Positions 35,241 to 59,514 of a stretch of 64,000 nucleotides of DNA are shown piece by piece. Origin of the DNA: Isurus oxyrinchus (Eukaryota); the NCBI GenBank assembly GCA_026770705.1, contig JANJGN010000150.1:496001-560000 (forward strand), written 5' to 3'. The notes below the pieces were generated by a model that was given only the letters and a program-made list of their open reading frames with translations, was not told where the DNA came from and did not search any database. Each line of letters starts with the position of its first letter. Position 1 is the first letter of the stretch. The position numbers and the translations under genes are program-made.

Positions 35241-35710
35241 AGAGGCCGAGTGATTGGTGATTCCTTAAACATTGAAGAGAGAATGAACACCAATCAGATT
35301 GAATCAGATTAGCCAATCAGCTGTGTTGAAGAGCAGACAGGAATGTTAGGCTAATTAGTGATTCATGACGGTGATAATGGGGGGAGTTCTGAGGGCTCCT
35401 AATCCATTGTCCTGTCTTGTAAATCAGCACTGAATGGATCTCAGTTGGTGTGTCTTATAGACACTGTGTTGGGAGGAAGACTGGCTTCACTAAACAGGGT
35501 CCTGAGGATCATGAGCCAATGTAGAATGATCTTGTCCACTCCTGTGTCCAGGATTCTCTTCCATCCTTTGTGAAACCTTAGGGAGTTCGTTGTGTGTCCT
35601 GTAGATGGTCCACACTGCAGCCACTGTGCCCCAGTGATGGAGGGGGTGGATATCGAGTCTAGTGGATCTACAAAGTATCCAGGGTTAAATATTGAGATTT
35701 CTCTCCCCAG

Positions 35711-36079
35711 TTGGACTGTCACAAAAGTGGAAAGGTGACACACCACGAGAGGTGTCAGCGCAGGAAGGTTCGTGTGTACAGATTCCCTGTCATTACAGTT
35801 ATCCAGCAAAATTTGAAAACCAACCGCGAGGTGGAGTCTGGTTTAATAACGAGAAAGAGATTCCCTGGGCTCCCATTGCCTTTCACTCCAAGGATCACAG
35901 TCACGAGTTACCACGGTTCCACCATCGGACCCGGCTGTCTGGAGACCTGAAAGATGGCGACTGTTCCCTGATTATAAACAACATCAGACGGGAAGATGCA
36001 GGACCTTATTTTTTCAGAATAGAATTTGACAATGGTCCGAGCCATAACTATTACCCTGTAACCCAGCTTCACGTTTCTG
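35711..36079 (+). CDS. Siglec-like unit B, V-set Ig exon
   Basis: 369 nt, phase 1-1; GLSQKWKG...GSCVQIPC...GDCSL...YFFRIEFDNGPSHNYYP; essential Arg retained. Confidence 0.92.
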
Positions 36080-36479
36080 GTAAGTGCTGTGTTATAATTA
36101 CTCAACAATTCACATTCAGCACTCAATGGGAAATAACACAAACTGTGACGTTTACACATTAACACAAAACGCAGCTTATTATAACACACTGTCTGATTCT
36201 CAATAACCTGGTGATAGCTTCCAGTTCTGTCCTAAAGCAACCTCTAATACTCACTTTAATATCAATGATGAAATGCATTGATTGTGTCCATTAATGTTAT
36301 CAGGTTATCCACTCTCATCGATCTCTCTAATCCAGTTTAAAAGTCTCTCCTGATCATTGTAACCTTTCAGTTCTGATATCATCCTTGTAAAAGTGCTTTT
36401 TCTTGTGGGACTGTGATTTCTATTTGAACTGATGCTTCACGTTATATTTCTCTAAAAGGATCCATTCTCTGTCTGTTAG

Positions 36480-36776
36480 ATTTCACAGATAAACCCACGA
36501 TATTCCCTGCTGAAATTATTGCAGGAAAGCGTGTGGATGTAAGCTGCACCTTCAACACAACGTGCAATGGAACAGCAGCACCTGTCTTAACCTGGGACAC
36601 TCCCACTGACGTACCTGGATCAGTCTCAAACACTGTAACTCAGCATGGTGTCACTCTGACCTATACTTCTGTTCTGACCCTGACCCCATCACTCAAACAC
36701 CACGGACACACTCTAAGCTGCAGAGTGAGATATCTATCTGTTTCATCGGAGCGGACCCTCGTATTAACTGTGCAAG
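36480..36776 (+). CDS. Unit B C2-set exon 1
   Basis: 297 nt, near-identical to 11906-12202, splice sites intact. Confidence 0.92.
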
Positions 36777-38299: not shown

Positions 38300-39535
38300 C
38301 ACCTCTGACAGTGCAGCACTCTCTCAGAACTGACACTCCAACAGTTCAGCACCACCTCTCCACTGACCCTCTGACAATGTAGCGCTCCCTCAGTACTGAC
38401 ACTCCAAAAGTTCAGCACCATCTCTCTACTGACCCTCTGACAATGCATCACTCCCTCAGTACTGACCACCTGACAGTGCAGTGCTCCCGCAGCACTGACC
38501 CACCGACAATGCTGCAATCCCTAGGTACTGACCCTCCGACAGTGCAGCACTCCCTCAGTACTGAGAGTCAGTACTGCGGGAGTGCTGCACTGTCGGACGG
38601 TCAGTACTGAGGGAGTGCTGCACTGTCAGAGGGCAGTACTGAGAGAGTGCCACACTGTCAGAGTGTCAGTACTGAGGGAGTGCTGCACTGTCAGAGGGTC
38701 AGTACTGAGGGAGTGCTGCACTTCGGAGAGTGAATACTGAGGGAGTGCTGCACTGTCAGAGGGTCATTACTGAGGGATTGCTGCAATGTCAGAGGGTCAT
38801 TACTGAGGGAGTGCTGCACTGTCGGAGGGTCAGTATTGAGGGAGTGCTGCACTGTCAGAGGGTGAATACTGAGGGAGTGCTGCACTGTCGGAGGGTGAAT
38901 ACTGAGGGAGTGCTGCACTGTCATCGGGTCAGTACTGAGGGAGTGCTGAACTTTCAGAGGGTCAGTACTGAGGGGGTGCTGCACTGTTGGAGGGTGAGTA
39001 CTGAGGTGGTGCTGCACCATTGGGGGTTCAGTACTGACGGAGTGCTGCACTGTCACCGGGTCAGTACTGAGGGAGTGCTGCACTGTCAGAGGGTCAGTAC
39101 TGAGGGCTGCTGCACTGTCAGAGGGTCAGTACTGAGGGAGTGCTACACTGTCAGAGGGTGAGTACTGAGGGAGTGCTGCACTGTCAGAGGGTCAGTACTG
39201 ATGGAGTGCTGCACTGTCAGAGGGTCAGTACTGATGGAGTGCTGTACTGTCGGAGGGTCAGTACTGAGGGAGTGCTGCACTGTCAGAGGGTCAGTACTGA
39301 TGGAGTGCTGCACTGTCAGAGGGTCAGTACTGATGGAGTGCTGTACTGTCGGAGGGTCAGTACTGAGGGAGTGCTGCACTGTCAGAGGGTCAGTACTGAT
39401 GGAGTGCTGTACTGTCGGAGGGTCAGTACTGAGGGAGTGCTGCACCGTCGGAGGGTGAGTACTGAGGGGGTGCTGCACCTTTGGGGGGTCAGTATTGAGG
39501 GAGTGCTGCACCGTTGGGGGGTCATTGCCGAGTGA
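38300..39535. repeat. 33-bp satellite array with an orientation switch at 38566
   Basis: Plus-orientation units at 38300-38564, minus-orientation units at 38568-39535. Confidence 0.93.
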
Positions 39536-39714
39536 GTGCTGCTCTGTCGGAGAATCATCACTTGTATCAAAACGTTTTTAACTTTACTGTTGTTCCCACT
39601 TCAGCTGCAACTGCTCCACATCCCCATGTGTTAACTGGAGCATGTCAGCCTGGAGTTACGTGGAATTGCAGAGCAGAATCTGCTCTCACACATTGAAGCT
39701 GGCAATCGCTAAGT

Positions 39715-41070: not shown

Positions 41071-41149
41071 GTGACCCTATTGAAAAATCAGAGGACAAAT
41101 CCAAATTGTTTTCTGCTTGTCAGTTAACATCTGGAACTTTCTATTCCAG

Positions 41150-41437
41150 ATGCTCCAGATAAGCCAGTTATTGTGCTCCTGAAGGATTTACAGGAGGGGA
41201 CTCCTGCACATATCATCTGTAAATGCCTCTACACCTGCCCTGATAACCACCCCAATCTAACCTGGAGTGAATTGCTGACTTCCTCGGTCAGCACCATCAC
41301 AGAGAACAGTGGTGATGTTTCCGCTCTACTGACCTTTAACCCTTCGTTCAAGCATCATGGACGAACTCTCTACTGTACGTGTGACTACTCTCAAACCAGC
41401 CATCGAGTGGTCAACTCAGTTACTCTGAGTGTAAAGT
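41150..41437 (+). CDS. Unit B C2-set exon 2 (second domain-2-type Ig, five Cys)
   Basis: tttctattccag acceptor, AAGT|gtaagt donor, 288 nt; DAPDKP...IICKCLYTCPDNHPNLTW...LLTFNPSFKHHGRTLYCTC. Confidence 0.88.
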
Positions 41438-41945
41438 GTAAGTATTGGTTAGAACATCCTGCTTGTGATGGAGGGGGAGTCAGTCTCCTACTAAATCAGG
41501 CATTGGAGAAGGTGCAAGTGGGATTGACAAGGATGATTCCAGAACTGAGAGGTTATAACTATCAGGAAAGACTGAACAAGCTGGGCTTCTTTTCTCTAGA
41601 AAAGAGAAGGCTGAGGGGGTGACCTGATCGAGGTCCTTAAAATGGTGAAAGGGTTTCGATAGGGTAGATGTGGAGAAGATGTCTCCACTTGTCGGAGTGA
41701 CGAAGAGTTAGGGGCCATCAATATAAGATCATCACTAATAAAATGGTGCACACTGCAAACAATGTGCGTTCATGGTGGAGGGAGTGAATGTTGAAGATGG
41801 TGGGTGGGATGCCAATCAATCGGGCTGCGTTGTCCTGGATGGTGTCGAGCTTCTTGAGTGTTGTTGGAGCCGCACTCATCCCGGCAACTGGAGAGAATTC
41901 CATCACACTCAGTGTTTAATGTGTTGATAATTTTGTATTTGAAAG

Positions 41946-42203
41946 ATTCTCCTCACAACACGTCTGTCAGGCTGACACTGGAAAAAGGAAAGGTGATTTC
42001 TCTAAGTTGTTCCAGTGACGAGAATCCTGCGGTCCACAATTTCACCTGGTTTAAGATATCCCAAGGAAAGGTGACGAATCTGGCGCTCGCTGGTCAAACT
42101 ATTACAGTTCCTTCTGGATTCGATGAGGAAATCTCCTACTACTGTGAAGCAACAAGTATCCTGGGCAGTTCCCAGTCTCTGCCCATTAGAATTCCCACTG
42201 AAT
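41946..42203 (+). CDS. Unit B C2-set exon 3 (CD22/sialoadhesin-like repeat)
   Basis: 258 nt, phase 1-1, donor GAAT|gtgagt; YSPHNTSV...LSCSSDENPAVHNFTWFK...YYCEATSILG. Confidence 0.87.
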
Positions 42204-42708
42204 GTGAGTAATTTCAATCCTGACTTTTAAACAATTCCACATCTTGTCCAAACTCCGAGGTGAACCAAATCTCCCCTTGGGTGTTGCTGAAAACATGCTG
42301 TCGAAGGTTTCAGTCTCGTCAGGACAGAGTCACGAGAAAACCCAATCTCAAAGGGAACAGCCATTTCTGATGCGGGGGAAGAGGGCGTGCTGATTGGCTG
42401 GCAAGACGACATTTCTCCACAGTTTGTTCACAATTCTCAGTGATGGTCACCATGAAACTACCAGATTGTTGTAAAAACCCTTCAGTACTGTCCCTCCAAC
42501 AGTGCAGATCTCCCTCGCTACTGACTCTCTGATAGTGTAGCACCCTCTCAGTACTGACCTTCTGACATTGCAGGACTCCCTCAGGACTGAACTGAAGTGT
42601 CTGCCTGAATTAAGTTCTTTGTGGTGAAGGAACCTACATTGATATCACACCTTTCACATTCTCAGGGTCTCTCAAAGTGTTTCACAGTCAATGTAAGTAA
42701 CTGATCAG

Positions 42709-42990
42709 ACACACCACAGAATCTCTCAATTAATTCTCTTGATATAATTAACGCTTCATCGATCAATATAATTGAGGGGAATTCTGCAGTGATAATCTGC
42801 TCTGTCGAGAGCTTCCCAGCTTCTAACCTGACGTGGCGACATCTTAATGTCCCAATGAACAGAACAAGTTCCAACAATGAGCTGTGGTTGGTGATTCCTC
42901 ACGTTACATCCAGGGACACGGGACACTATCAGTGTGCGGCAGAGAAGGAACATGGAGCAGTGGAGGGATTTATAACCATCTCTGTGGAAC
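42709..42990 (+). CDS. Unit B C2-set exon 4 (membrane-proximal)
   Basis: 282 nt open frame YTPQNLSI...IICSVESFPASNLTW...DTGHYQCAAE; donor GAAC|gtgagt. The acceptor (aagtaactgatcag) is weak. Confidence 0.8.
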
Positions 42991-43019
42991 GTGAGTTACA
43001 CAGAATTGAACGTTCTTGT

Positions 43020-44065
43020 GTTATTAGCTCATGGGATGTGGGCATTGTTGACAAGACCAGAAATTATTGCCCATCTGTAACTGCCCCTTGAGAAGGTGGT
43101 GGTGAGCTGCCTTCTTTAACCACTGCAGTCCATGTGGTGTAGGCACACCCACAGTGCTGTTTGGGAGGGAGTTCCAGGATTATGTCCCAGTGATGGTGAA
43201 GGAACGGCCGATATAGTTCCAAGTCACAGGGCAGACCACCACCTCAAGTTCACCTCCAAATCACACACCTCACTGACTTGGAACTGTCTTGGTGGAAGAG
43301 GTTAAGAGTTTGGAAGGTGCTGTCGAAGGAGCCTTGGTGAGTTGCTGCAGTGCATCTTGTAGATGGTGCACACTGCTGCCATTGTGTGCCAGTGGTGGAG
43401 GATATGAATGTTTATGCTGGTGGATGGGCTGTCGATCAAACAAGCTGCTCCTGGATGGTGTTGAGGTTCTTGAGTGTTGTTGGAGCTGCACTCATCCAGC
43501 CAAGTGGAGATTATTCCATCACACTCCTGACTTGTGCCTTGTCGATGGTGGACAGGCTTTGGGTGGTCAGGAGTTGAATTACTCACCACAGAGTTCCCAG
43601 CCTCTGACCCGCTCTTGTAGCCACATTATTTCCTGTTGCTGGGTTGTTGCCAGGGCCAATAGCCTTTGCTGTATCCAGTATCATCAGCTGATTCCTGATG
43701 TCACGTGGAGTCAATCGAATTGTCTGAAAGCTGACATCTGTGATGCTGGGACCCTCTGGAGGAGGCCGAGATGGAGCATCCACTCAGCACTTCTGGCTGA
43801 ACATGGTTGCCAATGCTTCAGCCTTGTCGTTTGCACTGATGTGCTGAGCTCCCCCATCATTAAGGATGGGGATATTTGTGGAGCATCCTCCTCCTGTTAG
43901 ATCTTTAATTGTCCATCACCATTCATGACTGGATGTGGCAGGACTGCAGAGCTTAGATCTGACCCGTTGGTTGTGGGATCGCTTTGCTCTGTCTATAGCA
44001 TGTTGTTTCCGCTGTTTGGCGTGTATGTAGTCCTGTGTGTCACCTCAGCAGCTTGGCACCTCTGT
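43020..44065 (-). mobile_element. CR1/Crack-like LINE fragments
   Basis: Same family as 22845-23580; LDTAKAIGPGNNP motif. Confidence 0.75.
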
Positions 44066-44254: not shown

Positions 44255-44352
44255 GGCGAGATTCCAATGAATGGAAAGCAGGATTGCTTGGAGCTGGAAT
44301 CTGTTTGAGTGTTGGACTGAGTGGATTCTTCATTTTCAAGTGTGGTGAGAAA
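44255..44352 (+). CDS. Unit B transmembrane exon (homologous to unit A TM, +1 nt near the 3' end)
   Basis: attttacag acceptor, gtaagt donor; RDSNEWKAGLLGAGICLSVGLSGFFIFKCGEK; 98 nt versus 97 nt in unit A. Confidence 0.8.
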
Positions 44353-45782: not shown

Positions 45783-47866
45783 GTGATATCATTGTCAGCT
45801 CGGACAGATTTATGGCTAATAGTCTTTGTAAAAGATCATTCTTATTGAGCTCTGATTGGGAACAGATTCAGCAGTGAGCCAGTGTACAAACTCACACCAA
45901 GTCCCATTCACCCATCACCCCTGTGCTCACTGATATACACTGACTCCCTGTCTGACAGCAGAATTGGAGGATAGCAGAGGACTTTGAGGTTTGCATGGTT
46001 GGAGGAGAAAGTGATTGGAGAAGAGGAATGGAGGGAATGGAAATTGAGGATGAGAATCTTAAACTCGAGGCTCTGCTGGACTGGGAGCCAGTGCAGGTCA
46101 GCGAGTGGCGGAAGGCGTGAGGTGTTGAATTGAGAAACAGTGATAAATACTGGGGGATGAAGTCTATCCTGATGCTTGGACTCCGATAGCAAAGGAATGA
46201 AATTTGTGTCTTTTGCTGATTTTAATCAGAATTTCCCATGAAGACAACACAGCAGCTCCTAGAATAGACAGGCTGTTCAGTGTCACACTTCCTGTCCATT
46301 CTCACCTTGCTAGAAACTTCAATAAGGGAGCAAGATAACTGAAAGAGAGAAGGAAGGTAAAGCTGTCCGTGTGTAAAGGTGTCAATATTCAGTTTGTATA
46401 TTTGTCTTTCTCTCGACACATGCAGAGCTCAGGCTAGAGGCGCTTTGTTAGTGTGTTTCACAGTGTCTGCTGGAGTAGGGTCAGTGCTGAGCTTGGGGAC
46501 AAGTCAGTCTACAATGCTGCATCGGAATCAACAATACAACAATATGGGGTTTGGATCAGAAATAATCCCTCAGACAATGAGGATCCAAAGAGATTCCTTA
46601 GACAATGAGGATCCAAAAAGATTCCTTAGACATGAGGATCCAAAGAGATTCCTTAGACAATGAGGATCCAAAGAGATTCCTTAGACAATGAACATACAAA
46701 GTGCACCAATCAGATTGAATCAGATTAGCCAATCAGCTGTGTTGAAGAGCAGACAGGAATGTTAGGCTAATTAGTGATTCATGACGGTGACAATGGGGGG
46801 AGTTCTGAGGGCTCCTAATCCATTGTCCTGTCTTGTAAATCAGCACCTTAATACTGACCCTCCAACAGTGCAGCACTCCCTCAGTACTGATCCTCCAACA
46901 TTGCAGCACTCCCTGATTAATGTCCCTCTGACAGTGCAGCACTCGTCAGTACTGACCCTCAAACAGTGGAGATCTCCCTCAGTACTGACCTTACAATAGT
47001 GCAACACTCGCTCAGTAATGACCATCCGACAGTGCAGCACTTGCTCAGTACTGACACTGGGGAGTTTCAGTCTACTCTGTGGGGCAGACGTCCCCTGAAT
47101 CGGGTCTTGAATCCCACAACATTCTGACCCCCTGAATTTGGCTGTGAAACCCACTGACCCACAGGAGAAACTCCTGGTCAATGACTGTCCACCTGTGAGC
47201 AGAAATATCACCACAGGGTCAGGACACAAAGTTCACCAACATCTCAAAACATGAGCTGCTCTGTCACTTTGATCCAACTTCCTCATTTTGTCTCACAGAG
47301 ACACATCAACCCTTTCTCACTAAATACACAGAGGGGGCAGCACAGGAAGAGGTCATTCAGCCCAAGCAGAGCGTGTGGGCAGTTCCTCCCCAGGCGAGCA
47401 GTCGGACAGGTCCTGGGTAAGTAACGGAACGATTGGAATTCACTTCCACGACCAACACCGTCCTTTGTTGATGTTGTGACTTTATAAAGACAGATTCCAA
47501 TGATTGATGCCTTTGAAAGGTTTCTACTGATTATTGAGATCTGGGTGTGAGGCTCAAATCTGTTGTACAGAACATCTTTCTAGCTCAAGGGATGAGGGAA
47601 GTGCAGAGACATGAGCTTTGGGACATCCTGAGGTGGTGAAAGGTGCGATAGAAATGCAAATCCTTCATTGATTTTCTTTCTTAAAGCCTTGTAACTCTCT
47701 GCAGAGCACCTATCATCCCACAGAGAATCAAACTATTCTGTGAAGACATTGTCTAAAAGCAGTTCTGATCTCTCGAGAGCTGTCGGACAAGAGGTGAGGT
47801 CTCATTAACTCCTTTCTCTTTCACAGCTTGAGAGTGAGAAGTGGATGGAATATCTGGGAGTGGACG

Positions 47867-47906
47867 ATGATCGGGAAATCTTACTTCCTCCTGTCACTTC
47901 TCCAAG
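47867..47906 (+). CDS. Unit C signal-peptide exon, proximal copy (MIGKSYFLLSLLQ)
   Basis: Exon begins 47827; donor CAAG|gtaat. Confidence 0.75.
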
Positions 47907-48597
47907 GTAATATCATCGTCAGTATGGACAGATTTATGTTTAACAGTTTTTGTAAAAGATCATTCTTATCTCTTTATCTCTGTAACGTCCTGCAACTCAA
48001 CCAAACAACTTCCCAGATCTCTGTGTTACTCCAATTCCGGCCTCTTGACCATCCCCCGATTCCCATCACTCCAATAGTGGCGGCCGTGCCTTCAGCTGCC
48101 TGGGGCCTGAGCTCTGGAATTCACTCCCTAAACCTCGGCGATGGAGGAGATCAGAGGGTTTCATTTTACTGAGAATCACCACGACCACATCACAGCTGCA
48201 GTCAGAATAGACAGAGAGTCCAGCCCTCACACTTCCTGCACAGTTTCACCATAGCAACCACAATAAGGAAGTAAAATAACTGAAAGTTAAACCGAAGCCA
48301 AACCAGTCGGTGTAGAGAGATGAGATGTTTACACAGTTTCCCTGTGTATCTTGTAGACACTGTGTTGGGTGGAAGACTGGCTTCAGTAAACAGAGTCCTG
48401 AGGACCATGAGCCAATGTAGAATGAACTTGTCCACTCCTGTGTCCAGGATTCTCTTCCATCCATTGTGAAACCTTGGGGTGTTCCTTGTGTGTCCTGTAG
48501 TTAGTCCACACTGCAGCCACTGTGCCCCAGTGATGGAGGGAGTGGATATCAAGTCTAGTGGATTGACAAACCATCCAGAGTTAAATATTGACATTTA

Positions 48598-48628
48598 TAT
48601 TACCCTGTAACCCGGCTTCACGTTTCTG
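48598..48628 (+). pseudogene. Remnant of unit C V-set exon (acceptor and about 340 nt deleted)
   Basis: The upstream intron (…ttaaatattgacattt) is fused directly to tattaccctgtaacccggcttcacgtttctg|gtaagt. Confidence 0.9.
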
Positions 48629-49487
48629 GTAAGTGCTGTGTTATAATTACTCAACAATTCACATTCAACACTCAATGGGAAATAACACTAACTGTGACGT
48701 TTACATATTAACACAAAACACAGCTTATTATAACACACTGTCTGATTCTCAATAACCTGGTGATAGCTTCCAGTTCAGTCCTAAAGCAACCTCTAATACT
48801 CACTTTAATATCAATGATGAAAAGCATTAACTGTATTATCAGGTTATCCATTCCCATCAATCTCTCCTGTCCTGTTTAAAAGTCTGACGTATCGATAAAA
48901 GAAAGATGTGCATTTCTGCAGCGCAATTTACCACCTCAGGAGGATCCAAATCCCTTCACAGCCAATGAAATTATTCCTGAATTGTAGTCACAGATGTAAA
49001 ACACAGCAGGCAGTTTGTGCACAGCAAGATCCAACAAACCACAAGGTGATAAATCACCCAGATCACTGAGGAAATTAGAAGCCAGTGAACTCAAACCTCT
49101 GGTCTGATGAAGAGTCATACGGACTCGAAATGTTAACCCTGTCTTCCTCTCCACTGATACTGTCAGACCTGCTGAGTCTTTCCAGCAATTTTTGTTTTTG
49201 TTTCAGATTTCCAGCATCCGCAGTATTCTGCTTTTAACTCCAATCTCTGGTCTGAGCCTCTTCTCTCATCCAGTGTTCTCAATTCACATGTCTCGGAGTG
49301 AACGTGTATTAAGCTGAGAGACAGAAACACTACTGCCAAAGAGCAAGAAAATCTTTCCTGATCATTGTAACCTCTCAGTTCTGATATCATCCTTGTAAAA
49401 GTGCTTTCTCTTGTGGGACTGTGGTTTCTATTTGAACTGATGCTTCATGTTATATTTCTCTAAAAGGATCCATTCTCTGTCTGTTAG

Positions 49488-49784
49488 ATTTCACAGATAA
49501 ACCCATGATATTCCCTGCTGAAATTATTGCAGGAAAGCGTGTGGATGTAAGCTGCACCTTCAACACAACGTGCAATGGAACAGCAGCACCTGTCTTAACC
49601 TGGGACACTCCCACTGACGTCCCTGGATCAGTCTCAAACACTGTAACTCAGCATGGTGTCACTCTGACCTATACTTCTGTTCTGACCCTGATCCCATCAC
49701 TCAAACACCACGGACACACTCTCAGCTGCAGAGTGAGATATCCATCTGTTTCATCAGAGCGGACCCTCGTACTAACTGTGCAAG
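49488..49784 (+). CDS. Unit C C2-set exon 1 (intact)
   Basis: 297 nt, near-identical to the A and B copies, splice sites intact. Confidence 0.85.
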
Positions 49785-50057
49785 GTAATTACATACACCT
49801 TTCATTCTACATCAGCACTCCCTCAGCGCTGACCCTCTGACAGTGCAGCCCGTTCTCAGTATCCACATTCTCAGACCTCTCTAAGTGCTTCAAAGTCGAT
49901 AGAAGTTAATTGATCTTTATTTGATTATTGCTGAATGAAGAGACAAGCTGTCTAAACTTTACATCTCACACACACCATTCTCCATGGCAACACCTCCACC
50001 TATCAGAGACCACTTGTCAGCCAATCAGCACTCTCTTCCCATTAAGTATAAATTGTT

Positions 50058-50160
50058 AACAAAAACAGAATTACCTGGAAAAACTCAGTAGGTCTGGCAG
50101 CATCGGCAGAGGAGAAAAGAGTTGACGTTTCGAGTCCTCATGACCCTTCGACAGAACTTG
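50058..50160 (-). mobile_element. Penelope-like element terminal fragment with a hammerhead-like core (related fragments at 26382-26478 minus and 49103-49236 plus)
   Basis: aaaactcagcaggtctggcagcatc family; core CTG(T/A)NGA-stem-GAAA(C/T)GT. Confidence 0.6.
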
Positions 50161-50663
50161 TTACTCAACAATTCACATTCAACACTCAATGGGAAATAAC
50201 ACTAACTGTGACGTTTACATATTAACACAAAACACAGCTTATTATAACACACTGTCTGATTCTCAATAACCTGGTGATAGCTTCCAGTTCAGTCCTAAAG
50301 CAACCTCTAATACTCACTTTAATATCAATGATGAAAAGCATTAACTGTATTATCAGGTTATCCATTCCCATCAATCTCTCCTGTCCTGTTTAAAAGTCTG
50401 ACGTATCGATAAAAGAAAGATGTGCATTTCTGCAGCGCAATTTACCACCTCAGGAGGATCCAAATCCCTTCACAGCCAATGAAATTATTCCTGAATTGTA
50501 GTCACAGATGTAAAACACAGCAGGCAGTTTGTGCACAGCAAGATCCAACAAACCACAAGGTGATAAATCACCCAGATCACTGAGGAAATTAGTTATACAG
50601 AGTATAAATTGTTGTTCACTTTCTGTTGGTAATCCTGTGAACGGGCTTCTTGATTCCTGCCCT

Positions 50664-50816
50664 GACATCTTAATGTCCCAATGAACAGAACAACTTCCAA
50701 CAATGAGCTGTGGTTGGTGATTCCTCACATTACATCCAGGGACACTGGAGACTATCAGTGTGTGGCAGAGAATGAACATGGAGCAGTGGAGGGATTCATA
50801 ACCATCACTGTGGAAC
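50664..50816 (+). pseudogene. 5'-truncated copy of the membrane-proximal C2 exon (no acceptor)
   Basis: Matches 42838-42990 (HLNVPMNRTTSNNELWL...ITVE); its 5' half is replaced by repeat sequence. Confidence 0.88.
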
Positions 50817-52494
50817 GTGAGTGTACACAGACTTCAACATCTCTCGCAGATTCGAACACGACACAAACACCCTCAAACATACACATCTAAGTAGACACAT
50901 GCAGACACACATATATGACCACACAGAAAGACACACTCACACACAAACACACTAACACACACTCCCCTGTGGGCGACCTGACCTCCCTCAGTACTGCCCT
51001 GGAGAGTTGGCCTTAATTCTGGGATTTGTGTTCCCATTCATATTTATGCAAGAATATGGAAATTACAAAGTCTATTACAGACAGTCAGATGCATAGAGAC
51101 ACTCACAGATACTCTCTGCCTCTCCAACTCTCTCTCTCCCTTTAAGAAGCTTCCTGAAAGCTCACCCTTCGAACAATCACCGGTCCCAAATCCTCCTTAT
51201 CTGATTTGTGTGATTTTCTTTGTGTATTTGAGAGTAAGAGAGAGGTGGAGAGGTTTAGGAGGAGAATTCCTGTTGGTGAAAAGCTTACATCATGTTCTCA
51301 CCTTTCCAGTGCCCATATTTCACATGATGTCCAATGTCCTTGTTCATAATGGGAATTGCCTATGTAAACATCACGCTGTAGTTACATTCTCCTACCAGTG
51401 GTGGCATTGTAGCACTTAATCCTTGTGTTTCCCAGCTTTTCAAGCAACTCCACTTCCCAGTTTGCTCCACAAGCTGTGAGTTCATTGGAATTCAATTATT
51501 TCTCAAACGGTAGATTTGATGTCATTTTATTGAAAACTTCCTCAGTGCCTCCCTGAAGGGTTTACACTCTCTGGGAAGCAGGAATAGGCTGGATGTTGGG
51601 GAGCTCATCTTTTCCCAAAGAGTAGTGATCCTCAGGAATGTGCTGTCAGTGGGTGTGGTGGTTGCTGATTCTCTGTCGCCTTCAAGAGGGATCTGGAGTC
51701 GTTACTGACTGGGGGAGAGATCATGGAAACGGAGAATGGTACAGCACAGGAGGAGGCCATTCAGTCCATTGTGCCTGTGCCAGGTCTTTCAATGTTCTAT
51801 CCAATCAGATCCAATAACCACCATTCCAATTTGCCACCATCTTCCTCCTTTAAGTATTTATCCAATTTCCCTTTTGAAAGTTCCTATTGAATCTGCTTCC
51901 ACCGCCCTTTCAGGCAGCACCTTCCAGATCACAACAACTCGCTCTGTCAAAACAAATTCTCCTCATCTCCCCCTCCGGTTCGTCAATCTGTGTCCCTCTG
52001 GTTACCAAGCCTCCTGCCCCTTAAGTACATTGATACTGTTCACCTCAACCACTCCCTGTGGGAGCGAGTTCCACATTCTCCCCTCTCTCTGGGTAAAGAT
52101 TGGAACTGTTTATTAAGTGAGGCCTGTAAGTCCGTGGGGGAGTCCATCTCGATCCTGCCCGATTCGTACACGTGTCCGAGATGGATTTCCACCCTGCACT
52201 AAACGTTTCCAGAATTTTCTACAGCACAATCCTGTACACAACGATTGGGAGAAACATTGGACAGGGAGTCCAACAGCACAATGATCCATTCTCACCAATG
52301 TTCCACGCTAAGGGGAAAGTTCCGATTGTCCACTCTTAGAGTGTTTACAATGAAAACATTCATTCCACATTGAATCCCAGTGGATGGGTCAATATTACAG
52401 CAAATGTTGCAGTGATATGAAGCTTGATTGTTCAGCCAGAGTGAGAGATTGAAAGCGGAGAGTCAGTGATGATTTCTTTCTGTGTGTTCTCTAG

Positions 52495-52634
52495 ACAGTG
52501 GAGGAGAGATTCTGCACGTGATCCTGATCCTGGGAATACGAGCTGTGATATTCCTTGTGGCTGTGGTTATCACTATCGCTGGAGTCTGTGTCTGGGAGAG
52601 ACAAACAGTGAAAGCAAGTCGACAGACTGTTTGA
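52495..52634 (+). CDS. Activating-type TM/short-tail terminal exon with intramembrane Arg
   Basis: Strong acceptor tttctttctgtgtgttctctag. Phase-1 frame reads SGGE-ILHVILILGIRAVIFLVAVVITIAGVCVW-ERQTVKASRQTV-stop. This frame is absent from the ORF track. Confidence 0.82.
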
Positions 52635-53684
52635 AGCTTTGTACAGCAACAATCTGGTCAGTCAGTGCGGACAAATAACGTGTGATGTTGGGTTAAGTTG
52701 TAATGAAACTGGTCAGTGTCCTGGTTAGAATCACCTTCGTATCAGAGAGGCATTCCAGCACAGTGGGAGCCCATTCAGCCCATTGAGTCCATGCACATTT
52801 TGCTCCTCCAGCACGATGGGAGGGACTGTGATGGTTACGGGGCTGGGGGGGGGGTGAAGTGGGAGGGGATAGAAGCTTACCTGGTGGTATTGCCTCAGAC
52901 CCACCCTTTTTCAAGCTGATCCAATGTCGCAGTTGAAGAATAAGCTACAAAACAAATTGGCAGGGGAGGTCTCCCAGGGCCTGTGGGAGACATCACCCAC
53001 TGCATCTTCGGCCTGTTTGAAGGGGCACCCGAACAATTCCGGCTTTTCCAAATGATGAGGAAGACACAGCTGCACCCCGAGTCCCCTACTGGGGATCCAG
53101 AAGGTTGCAATAGCGCTGCGAGGGACTCATGGGCTCCACAGTGACTCCCTAATTAGCGACTGGAAGGTTTATGTTCATTTATCTTTATTATCCGTTCATG
53201 TTGAGCCATGGAGCTCCTGATCTGACACCTTTCTGTACCTCGTCCAATGCTTCTGTTATCAGGACTTCCACATCGATGTGAAAGAGCCATGATGATAGCA
53301 GACAGTCGCACAATGGGAATGGCACTAGGCCAGTGATCCAGAGGCCCAGGTGAATGCTTTGGAGGTACGGGTTCAAATCCCACCACGGCAGCTGGAGGAA
53401 TTTAGATTCGATTAATCAATAAATTTAATTGATTGATACATTTTTTTCTTATTCATTTCAGGGATGTTGGTGTCGCTGACTAGGCCAGTATTTGTTGCCC
53501 ATCTCCATTTGCCTTTGAGAACATATGGATATCTGAGTTAGGATCAGGAGTAGGTCACTCAGTCCCTCGAACCTGCTCCGCCATTCAGTAAGATCATGGC
53601 TGATCTGATTGTCACCTCAACCTCACATTCCTGCCTACCCCCAATGACCTTTCACCCCATTGTTAATCAAGAATCTATCTAGCT

Positions 53685-57770: not shown

Positions 57771-59514
57771 GAGGTGAATAGTGTCGATGTATTTAAGGGG
57801 AAGCTGGATAAACACACGAGGGAGAAATGAATAGAAGGATATGGTGATGGGGTGAGATGGAGAAGGGGTGGGCGGAGTCTCGTGTGGAGCAGAAACACCA
57901 GCACGGAGCAGATGGGCCAAATGACTCTCTGACAATGCAGCACACCCTCAAAACTCACCCTCCGAGAATGCAACATCCCTCAAGAGTGACTCTCTGAGAA
58001 TGCAGCACAACTTCAGTACTGACCCTCCGACAATGCAGCACTCCCTCAAAACTCACCCTCCAAGAGTGCAGCACTCCTTCAAGACTGACCCTCTAACAGT
58101 GCAGCACACCCTCAGTACTGACCCTCTGACAGTGCAGCACTCCCTCAGTACTGACACTCTGACAGTGCAGCACACCCTCAAAACTGACCCTCCGACAGCT
58201 CGGTAATTTCTCAATTACGCCTGGTGGTCCTTTTAACTCGGAGCTGAGAGTTGCAGAGAATTGAGCAGACACCCTGAACTGACACTTGCAGTGCAAGTAC
58301 TGGGAGTGCGCTGGTCATTATCATGCTGCTGTCTGTGGGATCTTACTGTGCGCCAATGGCTGTTGCTTTTCCCACAGTACATCAGTGACCTCACATGAAA
58401 GAAAAAAGCACTCGATTGTCTGCGAAACACTTTGGGACGTCCTGATGTGTGGGAAAGCGCTAGAGAAATGCAAGTCCTCTTTGTCTTTCACTCGATCCTC
58501 TAAGGTGTCTGTTGATTAACCAGCCTCTCGGTGTATGATGTAGGCCTGGTTATAAACAGTTAGAAGGATCAAATATCAAAAGTGCTTTGGTTGACAGTCA
58601 AATCGATTGTGCATTCGGAGAGATTAGATATCGTCTGCACACAATGACTCCAATCTCTGGCACTGACTGCCGCCTGGGGTCTCCATTCCACATAACACTC
58701 ACAACTTGCATTTACACAGCGCCTCTGACATTGCAAAATGTCCCAGCCCACATTACCGGAGCGTAAATCAGAGAGAAGTCTAACACTGAGTCACATATGG
58801 AGATATTAGGGATAGGTGACCAAAAGCTTGGTCAAAGATGTCAGTTTTTAAGGAACGTCTTAAAGGAGAGAGAGAGAGAAAGAGAGAGAGGCAGAGAGGT
58901 TAAGGGAGGGTATTCCGGAGCTCAGGGCCCCAGGCAGCTGAAGGCACGGCCACCAATGGTGGAGCGATGGGAATCAGGGGGTCCCGGGAGATGCAGTAAT
59001 TTCAGAGATTTTGGAGGAACATCGGGACCGGAGGAGGTGTTCTCCTGCTCCATATCTCTCTCTCTCTTCCTCTCATCCACTCCTCCTCTCCCTGTCTCTC
59101 TCTCTCCTACTCTTCCTCTCAATTGCCCTCTCTCCCAATCTTTCTCTCCTCTCTCCCTTTTCCTGCTCTCTCCCTCTCTCTCTCCCTGTCTCCTTCTCCC
59201 ACTCTGTATCTCTCCCTCTCTCTCACACTATTTTTGTACCTTTTGCTCACTCTGTAACTCTCCCTTCCCTGTTAATTTCTCTCTCTTGGACAATCTCTCT
59301 TCCCTTTTCACTTTCCCTCACTCTGCATCTCTTTAATTTCTCCCTCTGTCACTCTCTCCCACCTATGTTCTTTCCCTTTCACCCCTCCCCGTCCCACTCT
59401 CTGTCTCTCTCTTCCAATCCCTCCCTCCCCCATTCCATCCCTCTCTCCGACTCTCGACTCCCAGCCTCTCTTTAACCCACTCCCAGGCTGGATCAGTCTC
59501 CCTCTCACTATTCC

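What the first reader, a model, noticed from the sequence alone, without database searches (positions are those of the whole stretch)
52495..52634. Hidden TM exon with an intramembrane arginine (DAP12/FcRgamma-type docking)
Seen: a strong acceptor in phase 1 (matching every Ig exon donor here) opens ILHVILILGI-R-AVIFLVAVVITIAGVCVW, with the Arg codon CGA at 52539-52541, then a Tyr-free tail and TGA. The internal GAAA|gcaagt resembles the GAAA|gtaagt donor of the other TM exons, so the short tail may be read-through of a weakened or GC donor. Established: a basic TM residue plus a short tail recruits ITAM adaptors through their TM Asp. Which adaptor is used cannot be read from the sequence.
Basis: partly seen in the sequence, partly recalled or inferred. 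Interest (0 to 1): 0.8.

Follow-up and report, generated by a model that had tools for sequence, protein, structure and literature searches.

The report
Shark Siglec-like arginine membrane exon
This is a real, spliced exon that gives a shark Siglec-like immune receptor a membrane anchor with a buried arginine and almost no tail, the usual build of an activating receptor, and automatic annotation already shows the same exon in other sharks.

Summary
At 52495 a polypyrimidine/AG acceptor opens a stop-free frame reading SGGE-ILHVILILGI-R-AVIFLVAVVITIAGVCVW-ERQTVKASRQTV-TGA, with the Arg codon at 52539-52541.

Contigs of 4 of 4 runs laid (two coded organisms, three studies) join the upstream C2 exon (ends 49784) to 52495 across a GT..AG intron.

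The same cassette, with ILGIRA invariant, ends 15 of 15 homologous proteins from eight galeomorph shark species. Their ectodomains are Siglec-like, CD22-like and CEACAM/SLAM-like.

It is therefore not hidden: RefSeq models named "Siglec-14", "CD33-like" and similar already contain it.

All four runs read G, not C, at 52615. The exon runs on to 52656, where I infer a GT donor behind the stop. The 13-residue tail is conserved in relatives.

In this window the unit's V (lectin) exon is deleted, while the transcripts carry one, so this copy may be defective or mis-assembled.

Coupling to an adaptor chain is inferred by analogy and was not tested.

This scan has already reported the same cassette on other pieces of this genome.

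The finding is a new member of a known kind, of modest interest.

The parts
47867..47906 (+). Leader exon coding part (ATG..MIGKSYFLLSLLQ + 1 base, donor G|GTAATA, phase 1) of the activating unit
   Evidence: Sequence. One of 7 leader copies in the window. Contig pieces lie on 47826/47828-47904/47906 in X5 and X6. The residues match the N-termini of P0001-P0004, P0006-P0008.
48598..48628 (+). 31-nt remnant of the V-set (lectin) exon with its donor (CTG|GTAAGT). The acceptor and about 337 nt of the exon are absent from the window.
   Evidence: blastn gives 48344-48596 = 35448-35700 and 48598-48885 = 36049-36346, so the equivalent of 35701-36048 is missing. Breakpoint shown. Joint 48628|49488 is seen in 4 of 4 runs.
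49488..49784 (+). C2-set Ig exon (297 nt, open, phase 1 at both ends)
   Evidence: Pfam C2-set_2, E 6.7e-9. Frame. It is 290/297 and 289/297 nt identical to the C2 exons at 36480 and 11906, and homology stops just past the donor. Contig pieces lie on 49487-49782.
50664..50838 (+). 175-bp fragment of a third-type C2 exon (93.7% to 42838-43011) inside the intron. It is not part of the listed C2->TM contigs.
   Evidence: Contigs laid here carry loose upstream ends that continue the full exon of paralogues (tables 7 and 8).
52495..52656 (+). Transmembrane exon. The coding part is 52495-52634: linker SGGE, a 29-residue hydrophobic run with Arg (CGA 52539-52541), a 12-residue tail and TGA at 52632-52634. 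Then come 22 nt of 3' UTR up to the inferred donor CTG|GTCAGT.
   Evidence: Joint 49784|52495 in 4 of 4 runs. The pieces of X5 contig 18 and X6 contig 24 end at 52656, with 390 and 55 further letters not among the listed pieces. X1 contig 7 runs on unspliced to 52760.
52539..52541 (+). Arg codon (CGA) of the invariant ILGIRA motif
   Evidence: Invariant in 15 of 15 homologues.
52610..52619 (+). Base 52615 (C) is read as G in the transcripts (GCA Ala -> GGA Gly).
   Evidence: table 3: 52615 C>G at full depth in X1, X3, X5 and X6. for the codon. Relatives have Gly here (P0005, P0010-P0016).
15539..15635 (+). Uncharged TM exon of a neighbouring inhibitory-type Siglec-like gene (donor GAAA|GTAAGT), for comparison
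44255..44352 (+). Uncharged TM exon of the neighbouring multi-C2 Siglec-like gene (donor GAAA|GTAAGT), for comparison

Best explanation
The stretch is the transmembrane exon of an activating-type member of a shark Siglec-like (CD33/MAG-like) receptor cluster.

**Shown**
- The exon is spliced to the preceding C2 exon.
- It encodes a type I membrane anchor with one arginine about a third of the way into the hydrophobic run, followed by a 12-residue Tyr-free tail and a stop.
- The stop lies 22 nt before the point where spliced contig pieces end. I infer an exon junction there, so any downstream exons would be 3' UTR.
- The cassette, with ILGIRA invariant, is conserved across three orders of galeomorph sharks and is attached to several different Ig ectodomains.
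- Neighbouring genes with nearly identical C2 exons carry uncharged TM exons and Tyr-motif tails.

**Inferred**
- The buried Arg pairs with the two TM aspartates of a dimeric signalling chain (DAP12-, DAP10-, FcR-gamma- or zeta-type). The receptor then needs that chain for surface expression and signals activation, as the counterpart of its inhibitory neighbours.
- The Arg is deep (position 11 of 29), which resembles DAP12-type partners more than FcR-gamma-type partners. An Arg side chain is what FcR-gamma partners carry. The adaptor therefore stays open.

**This window's copy**
- Its V (lectin) exon is deleted while transcripts carry one. This particular copy may be a defective allele or paralogue, or an assembly error.

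**Confidence.** The figure given (0.7) is for the whole statement, including the inferred adaptor coupling. That the exon is real, spliced and conserved I hold at about 0.95.
For: **Sequence**
- Acceptor, frame, Arg codon and stop are as described.
- It is the strongest hydrophobic segment in the window.
- The flanks obey the positive-inside rule: DSGGE outside, ERQTVKASRQTV inside (read).

**Splicing**
- Joint 49784|52495, GT..AG, in 4 of 4 runs.
- Joint 48628|49488 in 4 of 4 runs.
- X6 contig 24 runs leader, 368 unlaid letters, C2, TM.
- X5 contig 18 runs C2, then TM to 52656, then 390 further letters.

**Conservation**
- 3 of 9 proteins returned end in the cassette.
- 3 of 3.
- 9 of 10.
- one more cluster member.
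- In all, 15 distinct proteins from 8 species, with ILGIRA invariant in 15 of 15 and every natural tail Tyr-free.
- The species checked belong to Lamniformes, Carcharhiniformes and Orectolobiformes.

**Ectodomain family**
- P0005 is closest to CD33 (1e-26), MAG and Siglec-5/-8/-10. It is further from Siglec-15 (8e-11).
- P0018 is closest to CEA/CEACAM1 and CD2.

**Paired design**
- The C2 exon is 97.3-97.6% identical in nucleotides to the neighbours' C2 exons, and homology ends after the donor.
- The neighbours have uncharged TM exons and tail exons with TEYAQI.

**Principle**
- One basic TM residue plus a pair of acidic residues of a signalling dimer drives assembly (PMC1440944, abstract and passages).
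- Activating Siglec-14/-16 are paired with Siglec-5/-11 (PMC13358205 and PMC4042635, passages).
Against: - No adaptor association, surface-expression dependence or signalling was or could be tested here.
- The runs are only guessed to be RNA, and they are contigs, so they give no expression level or strand.
- All four runs differ from the window at 49621 and 52615, and they carry a V exon that the window lacks. The transcripts may come from another allele or from a near-identical paralogue, not from this very copy.
- Unspliced contigs across both exon borders also exist (X3 contig 15, X1 contigs 6 and 7).
- In human type I receptors, DAP12 partners carry Lys and FcR-gamma partners carry Arg near the outer end of the TM (PMC1440944). 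A deep Arg fits neither rule cleanly.
- Whether sharks have the adaptors rests only on an unchecked note of this scan (s1-869613). My paper searches found nothing on it.
Confidence: 0.7

Rival explanations
1. The cassette is real, but this window's copy is a dead or crippled gene. Its lectin (V) exon is deleted, so it makes either nothing useful or a V-less leader-C2-TM product. The transcripts seen would then come from an intact allele or paralogue.
For: - The equivalent of 35701-36048 is missing at 48597 with a clean breakpoint.
- Transcripts carry 368 letters between leader and C2 (X6 contig 24).
- They differ from the window at 49621 and 52615 in 4 of 4 runs.
- An exact 432-bp duplicate and a stray C2 fragment lie in the intron.
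- Another follow-up note of this scan describes a dead copy elsewhere in the genome (s1-871938, not checked by me).
Against: - The leader, C2 and TM exons are all open, with intact splice sites.
- Transcripts are 99% alike to this copy, against 92-97% for the other C2 copies in the window.
- The deletion and the exact duplicate could be assembly errors.
- A leader-to-C2 splice would stay in frame (both phase 1).
Confidence: 0.4
2. The receptor is a tail-less decoy or adhesion molecule. The TM Arg serves something other than an ITAM/YxxM adaptor, such as ER retention and quality control, oligomerisation, or pairing with another receptor chain.
For: - No adaptor has been shown.
- The Arg position and side-chain combination fits neither the human DAP12 rule nor the FcR-gamma rule (PMC1440944).
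- The cytoplasmic tail has no motif.
Against: - ILGIRA is invariant in 15 of 15 proteins across three shark orders and across unrelated ectodomains. That argues for one specific, shared intramembrane partner.
- The paired layout with ITIM/ITSM-type neighbours is the known activating/inhibitory design (PMC13358205 passages).
Confidence: 0.12
3. The short tail is an artefact of read-through of a weakened GC donor at 52614. The true protein splices there to further cytoplasmic exons.
For: The window reads GAAA|GCAAGT, which looks like a GC-AG donor and like the GAAA|GTAAGT of the two uncharged TM exons.
Against: - 52615 is G, not C, in 4 of 4 runs.
- Contig pieces pass through to 52656.
- No joint from 52613 is among the 15 listed (25 more were not shown).
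- Relatives in three species encode the same tail..VKGSRQTV, then stop (P0010-P0013).
Confidence: 0.03
4. It is a chance open frame in an intron or repeat, never used.
For: None remains. The stretch is short, and hydrophobic frames do occur by chance (13 others, mostly simple repeats).
Against: Spliced contigs in 4 of 4 runs. Conservation in 8 species.
Confidence: 0.01

Closest known systems
Human Siglec-14 and Siglec-16 (activating partners of the pairs Siglec-5/-14 and Siglec-11/-16)
   Same: - Siglec V-set plus C2-set ectodomain.
- A basic residue in the TM, a short tail without Tyr motifs, and no ITIM.
- It sits beside inhibitory genes whose first Ig exons are almost identical, with the similarity ending after the shared Ig exons (PMC4042635 and PMC13358205 passages).
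- RefSeq itself names some shark models 'Siglec-14'.
- A loss-of-function structural variant is known for human SIGLEC14 (PMC4042635 passage). Here the V exon is deleted.
   Different: - It arose independently. The cassette is shark-specific as far as the searches show: one search gave hits in galeomorph sharks only, apart from one unrelated hit.
- The shark names are automatic, not orthology.
- The same TM exon also serves CD22-like and CEACAM/SLAM-like ectodomains.
- The adaptor is unknown.
Siglec-15 (activating Siglec; recalled, not checked here, as conserved through vertebrates with a TM Lys and DAP12 coupling; PMC13358205 lists it among the DAP12-associated Siglecs)
   Same: V-set plus one C2-set domain, a basic TM residue, and an activating type.
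   Different: - The shark ectodomain (P0005) is much closer to CD33/MAG/Siglec-5 (1e-26 to 1e-23) than to Siglec-15 (8e-11).
- The residue is Arg, not Lys.
- The tail is only 12 residues.
- The gene lies in a cluster of CD33-like paralogues.
FcR-gamma-coupled and DAP12-coupled Ig receptors of mammals (Fc-alpha-RI, KIR2DS) as analysed by Feng, Call and Wucherpfennig 2006 (PMC1440944)
   Same: One ionisable basic residue in an otherwise hydrophobic TM, and a short tail. Assembly is focused on that residue.
   Different: Fc-alpha-RI has Arg at TM position 3 and KIR has Lys at position 9 (passages). The shark cassette has Arg at about position 11 of 29, a combination those rules do not assign.
MDIR of the clearnose skate and NITR of bony fish (multigene activating/inhibitory Ig receptor families of fishes)
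   Same: They show that paired activating/inhibitory Ig receptor families exist in cartilaginous and bony fish (PMC3031540 passages).
   Different: They have different ectodomain families (CD300/TREM-like, or V-type NITR). No sequence comparison was made here.

Membership tests
Activating member of a paired Siglec set (Siglec-14/-16 type design) | Siglec V-set domain with the sialic-acid-binding Arg (the FFR-x-E motif is recalled, not from a call) | tested here: inconclusive
   In the window's copy the V exon is deleted apart from its last 31 nt. Transcripts carry a 368-letter exon in its place, but I could not read it. Homologues with the cassette have V-set/Ig_CD22 domains with ..YFFRIEF.. 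(P0005, P0003).
Activating member of a paired Siglec set (Siglec-14/-16 type design) | A single basic residue inside the TM helix | tested here: met
   Arg is residue 11 of the 29-residue hydrophobic run. It is invariant in 15 of 15 homologues.
Activating member of a paired Siglec set (Siglec-14/-16 type design) | A short cytoplasmic tail without ITIM/ITSM/ITAM tyrosines | tested here: met
   ERQTVKASRQTV then TGA, with no Tyr. The stop is retained in X5 contig 18, whose only difference from the window on this exon is at 52615. The tails of homologues are 5-12 residues (counted like the window's) and Tyr-free, leaving aside P0020, a fused model.
Activating member of a paired Siglec set (Siglec-14/-16 type design) | A linked inhibitory counterpart with a near-identical ectodomain but an uncharged TM and a Tyr-motif tail | tested here: met
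   The C2 exons are 289-290 of 297 nt identical, and homology ends after the donor. Uncharged TM exons lie at 15539 and 44255. Tail exons at 18118-18363 and 20950-21195 carry TEYAQI. V-exon identity could not be compared for this copy.
Activating member of a paired Siglec set (Siglec-14/-16 type design) | Physical and functional coupling to DAP12 or another signalling chain through the TM charge | not testable with these tools
   This needs co-expression, co-precipitation and an Arg mutant.
Siglec-15 orthologue | Ectodomain closest to Siglec-15 | tested here: not met
   P0005 against PDB chains: CD33 1e-26, MAG 1.8e-24, Siglec-5 1.6e-23, Siglec-15 8.4e-11. No tree was built.
FcR-gamma-coupled Ig receptors (Fc-alpha-RI type) | [quoted passage not shown] | tested here: not met
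   The Arg is at position 11 of the hydrophobic run, against position 3 for Fc-alpha-RI (PMC1440944 passage). The side chain (Arg) does fit.
DAP12-coupled type I receptors (KIR2DS type) | Lys near the centre of the TM (about position 9) | tested here: inconclusive
   The depth fits (position 11 of 29) but the residue is Arg, not Lys. In the cited assay a K-to-R change cut KIR-DAP12 assembly to 15% (PMC1440944 passage). From memory, not checked here, human Siglec-14 has a TM Arg and still uses DAP12.

The most novel reading that the evidence does not exclude
The ILGIRA exon is one ancient, mobile 'activation cassette' of galeomorph sharks. By exon shuffling it has been placed behind at least three unrelated Ig ectodomain families: CD33/MAG-like Siglecs, CD22-like multi-Ig receptors and CEACAM/SLAM-like receptors. 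All of them therefore plug into one dedicated signalling chain through the same invariant intramembrane face. In the Siglec cluster it forms activating/inhibitory pairs whose ectodomain exons are kept alike by gene conversion. That would be an independent, far older re-invention of the primate Siglec-5/-14 arrangement.
Probability: 0.4. Interest if true: 0.5.

Novelty: new member of a known kind. Interest (0 to 1): 0.3.

Why it matters
The finding shows that the activating half of the paired-receptor design (a basic TM residue and no tail) is present and expressed in a shark Siglec-like cluster, next to inhibitory genes that share its Ig exons. If the adaptor is found, sharks would give an independent example of activating/inhibitory Siglec pairs, which are thought to arise under pathogen pressure. 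The invariant ILGIRA face would be a handle for finding which signalling chain cartilaginous fish use.

For genome annotation it gives exact exon limits: 52495-52656, with the stop 22 nt before the inferred donor. It also flags that this copy lacks its lectin exon.

Taken alone it is an expected kind of gene. Automatic annotation of related sharks already contains it, and this scan has already met it elsewhere in the same genome.

Tried and rejected
- **Paralogues of the TM exon in the window.** blastn and tblastn found none.
- **Phase argument against the GC donor.** I dropped it. The two uncharged TM exons are 97 and 98 nt, so their GAAA|GT donors are themselves in different phases. Phase therefore decides nothing, and the RNA letters decide it instead.
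- **Pfam on the 45-residue exon.** No family, as expected for a TM segment.
- **Region search with P0005 residues 222-270.** It returned only 3 proteins among 6 candidates and missed the S. canicula proteins that carry the cassette, so that tool's blank elsewhere means little. The exhaustive phmmer is the better guide. It listed 10 hits. I dropped P0019, a metagenome protein with 11 low-complexity stretches, 44% identity and other Pfam families, as unrelated.
- **Six of the 9 proteins do not end in the cassette.** P0001, P0002 and P0007 are short models. P0004 and P0006 end in what look like read-through tails. P0009 (sawfish) has an uncharged TM and a Tyr-motif tail.
- **Literature.**
  - Searches for shark or cartilaginous-fish Siglecs with an activating TM found no paper describing this receptor.
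  - Searches for DAP12/TYROBP/FcR-gamma in sharks found nothing on it either.
  - This covers only the open library searched.
- **Outside Galeoidea.** No hit was found at E <= 0.001 with a 45-residue query. This is a weak negative.
- **Where the exon(s) after 52656 lie.** Not found: the contigs' further letters are not among the listed pieces.

Full report
**What the window is.** The + strand carries a cluster of Siglec-like genes of a cartilaginous fish.
- V-set exons lie at about 7094, 10788 and 35689 (Pfam V-set and Ig_CD22).
- C2-set exons lie at 11906, 36480 and 49488. A run of three further Ig exons lies at 41128-43088.
- Two uncharged transmembrane exons lie at 15539-15635 and 44255-44352, both with the donor GAAA|GTAAGT.
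- Two tail exons at 18118-18363 and 20950-21195 carry TEYAQI.
- The best-matching named proteins are from the great white shark. The C2 exon at 49488 is 96 of 98 residues identical to P0011.

**The observation.**
- At 52495 a pyrimidine-rich tract and AG open a frame. After the two bases that finish a split codon, it reads SGGEILHVILILGIRAVIFLVAVVITIAGVCVWERQTVKASRQTV, then TGA at 52632-52634.
- The Arg codon CGA is at 52539-52541, and Arg is residue 11 of a 29-residue hydrophobic run.
- The segment has the highest hydropathy of the 14 found in the six frames of the window.
- It has no paralogue in the window.
- An acidic flank lies outside and a net basic flank inside, which fits a type I orientation.

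**Is it used?** One search found runs that hold the stretch. Their kind is only guessed as RNA, and ids and organisms are coded. I laid the contigs of four of them on 47700-53600: X1 and X3 (organism A, one sample), X5 (organism A, another study) and X6 (organism B).
- All four hold a joint listed as 49782->52493, GT..AG, cut +2.
- All four hold the joint 48628|49488, the V exon's end joined to C2.
- X6 contig 24 (972 letters) lies on the leader (47828-47906). Then it lies on C2 (49487-49782) and the TM exon (52493-52656), with 55 letters beyond.
- X5 contig 18 (850 letters) lies on C2 and on 52493-52656, with a single differing letter on the latter. It has 390 more letters that are not among the listed pieces.
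- Both pieces stop at 52656, directly before GTCAGT. I infer a donor there, so the stop lies 22 nt before an exon junction and what follows is 3' UTR.
- Unspliced contigs also exist across the acceptor (X3 contig 15, X1 contig 6) and past 52656 to 52760 (X1 contig 7).
- Contigs cannot give level, strand or ends.

**The GC-donor idea.**
- All four runs read G there at full depth. This turns Ala (GCA) into Gly (GGA).
- Relatives have Gly at that place and the same tail..VKGSRQTV (P0010-P0013).
- The short tail is therefore the conserved coding end, not a read-through.
- A phase argument does not help, because the two uncharged TM exons differ by one base in length.

**Relatives.** I searched the exons apart and did not join them into a spliced model.
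- A V-exon query returned nine shark proteins. Three (P0003, P0005, P0008) end in this cassette. The other six are short models, read-through tails, or an uncharged-TM form with a Tyr-motif tail from a sawfish.
- A region search with the end of P0005 gave P0005 again plus P0010 and P0011.
- An exhaustive phmmer of the 45-residue exon against 1.84 billion representatives gave 10 hits at E <= 0.001. Nine carry the cassette. One (P0019) is unrelated and was dropped.
- Their cluster look-up added P0022 and the public names.
- Altogether there are 15 proteins from eight species: great white shark, two catsharks, a smooth-hound, two bamboo sharks, the epaulette shark and the whale shark. The three species whose lineage I looked up, one per order, belong to Lamniformes, Carcharhiniformes and Orectolobiformes.
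- ILGIRA is invariant in 15 of 15. The tails are 5-12 residues (counted like the window's) and Tyr-free, apart from P0020, where the model runs on into another gene's C2 exon.
- The ectodomains differ:
  - V plus C2 Siglec-like. P0005 is closest to CD33, MAG and Siglec-5, and far less close to Siglec-15.
  - Siglec-like with more Ig domains (P0013, P0014).
  - CD22-like multi-Ig (P0015, P0016, P0022; Pfam for P0015 and P0016, the source's name for all three).
  - A single V-set domain (P0017).
  - CEACAM/CD2/SLAM-like (P0018; P0021 by its public name).
- The exon is thus a shared cassette. It is not hidden in general, since RefSeq models named Siglec-11, -12, -13, -14, CD33-like, CD22-like and SLAMF9-like contain it.

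**Paired layout.**
- The C2 exon of this unit is 290/297 and 289/297 nt identical to the C2 exons of the neighbouring genes.
- The 250 nt upstream are still alike (185/244 and 217/250). The 250 nt downstream are not.
- The neighbours continue to uncharged TM exons and Tyr-motif tails.
- This is the layout described for primate Siglec-5/-14 and -11/-16, where conversion covers the first two domains only (PMC4042635 and PMC13358205, passages read).

**This copy's defect.**
- At 48597 the equivalent of 35701-36048 is missing. That is the V exon's acceptor and about 337 of its 368 nt.
- The intron also holds an exact 432-bp duplicate (48647-49078 = 50161-50592) and a 175-bp fragment of another Ig exon.
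- The transcripts carry a V-sized exon, and they differ from the window at 49621 (synonymous) and 52615 in all four runs.
- I cannot tell whether the window shows a real deletion allele, a crippled paralogue or an assembly fault.
- The leader, C2 and TM exons are intact, and a leader-to-C2 splice would stay in frame. No such joint is among the 15 listed (25 were not shown).

**Mechanism.**
- Established principle: activating immune receptors assemble with dimeric signalling chains through one basic TM residue and a pair of acidic residues, with little demand on the rest of the helix (PMC1440944, abstract and passages).
- In that work FcR-gamma partners have Arg near the outer end (position 3 in Fc-alpha-RI), and type I DAP12 partners have Lys near the centre (position 9 in KIR).
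- The shark cassette has Arg at a central depth. The adaptor cannot be assigned, and the depth leans towards a DAP12/DAP10-like partner. This is inference.
- The invariance of ILGIRA across unrelated ectodomains and three orders argues for a specific shared partner.
- I found no paper on such adaptors or on activating Siglecs in sharks.
- Activating/inhibitory Ig receptor families as such are known in a skate (MDIR; PMC3031540 passages).

**Earlier notes of this scan.**
- The same cassette was flagged on at least seven other pieces of this genome.
- Three follow-ups reached the same reading: real and spliced, annotated in other sharks, reused by three receptor families, with one dead copy.
- I had reached the cassette-sharing result before reading them.
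- They are not independent evidence.

**Limits.**
- Supplements were closed.
- The runs' kind is a guess.
- Only contigs were available.

**Verdict.** The finding is a new member of a known kind, of modest interest.

Noticed in passing
window 1796, 27265, 29032, 30791, 32558, 45743, 47867 (+): There are seven copies of the Siglec leader exon (ATG..MIGKSYFLLSLLQ). Four of them lie in tandem units of about 1.76 kb at 26.9-33 kb, upstream of the V exon at 35689. That is far more leaders than V exons.
   Followed up: partly
window 48647-49078 and 50161-50592: An exact 432-bp direct duplicate lies inside the activating unit, next to the V-exon deletion at 48597. It is either a very recent rearrangement or an assembly artefact.
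   Followed up: partly
window 50664-50838: A 175-bp fragment of the third-type C2 exon (93.7% to 42838-43011) is stranded in the intron between the C2 and TM(Arg) exons. Relatives P0013 and P0014 join that kind of Ig domain directly to the cassette.
   Followed up: partly
window 15539-15635 and 44255-44352: The two uncharged TM exons share the donor GAAA|GTAAGT but are 97 and 98 nt long, so their donors are in different phases. One gene may be frame-shifted, or it may use a different next exon.
   Followed up: no
window 7094-7591 and 10788-11258: Two V-set exons lie 3.7 kb apart before one C2 exon (11906). Great white shark models P0010 and P0011 also string two V domains before C2 and the cassette.
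   Followed up: no
proteins P0015, P0016, P0018, P0021 (other sharks): The ILGIRA cassette also closes CD22-like multi-Ig and CEACAM/SLAM-like receptors, so it is shared between receptor families.
   Followed up: partly
window 800-1213, 17687-18000, 38694-39577, 57925-58203: There are long arrays of a repeat of about 30 nt that is open in several frames on both strands (..VSTEGVLHCQR.. / ..TVQHSLSTDP..). It is a common interspersed satellite of this genome.
   Followed up: no
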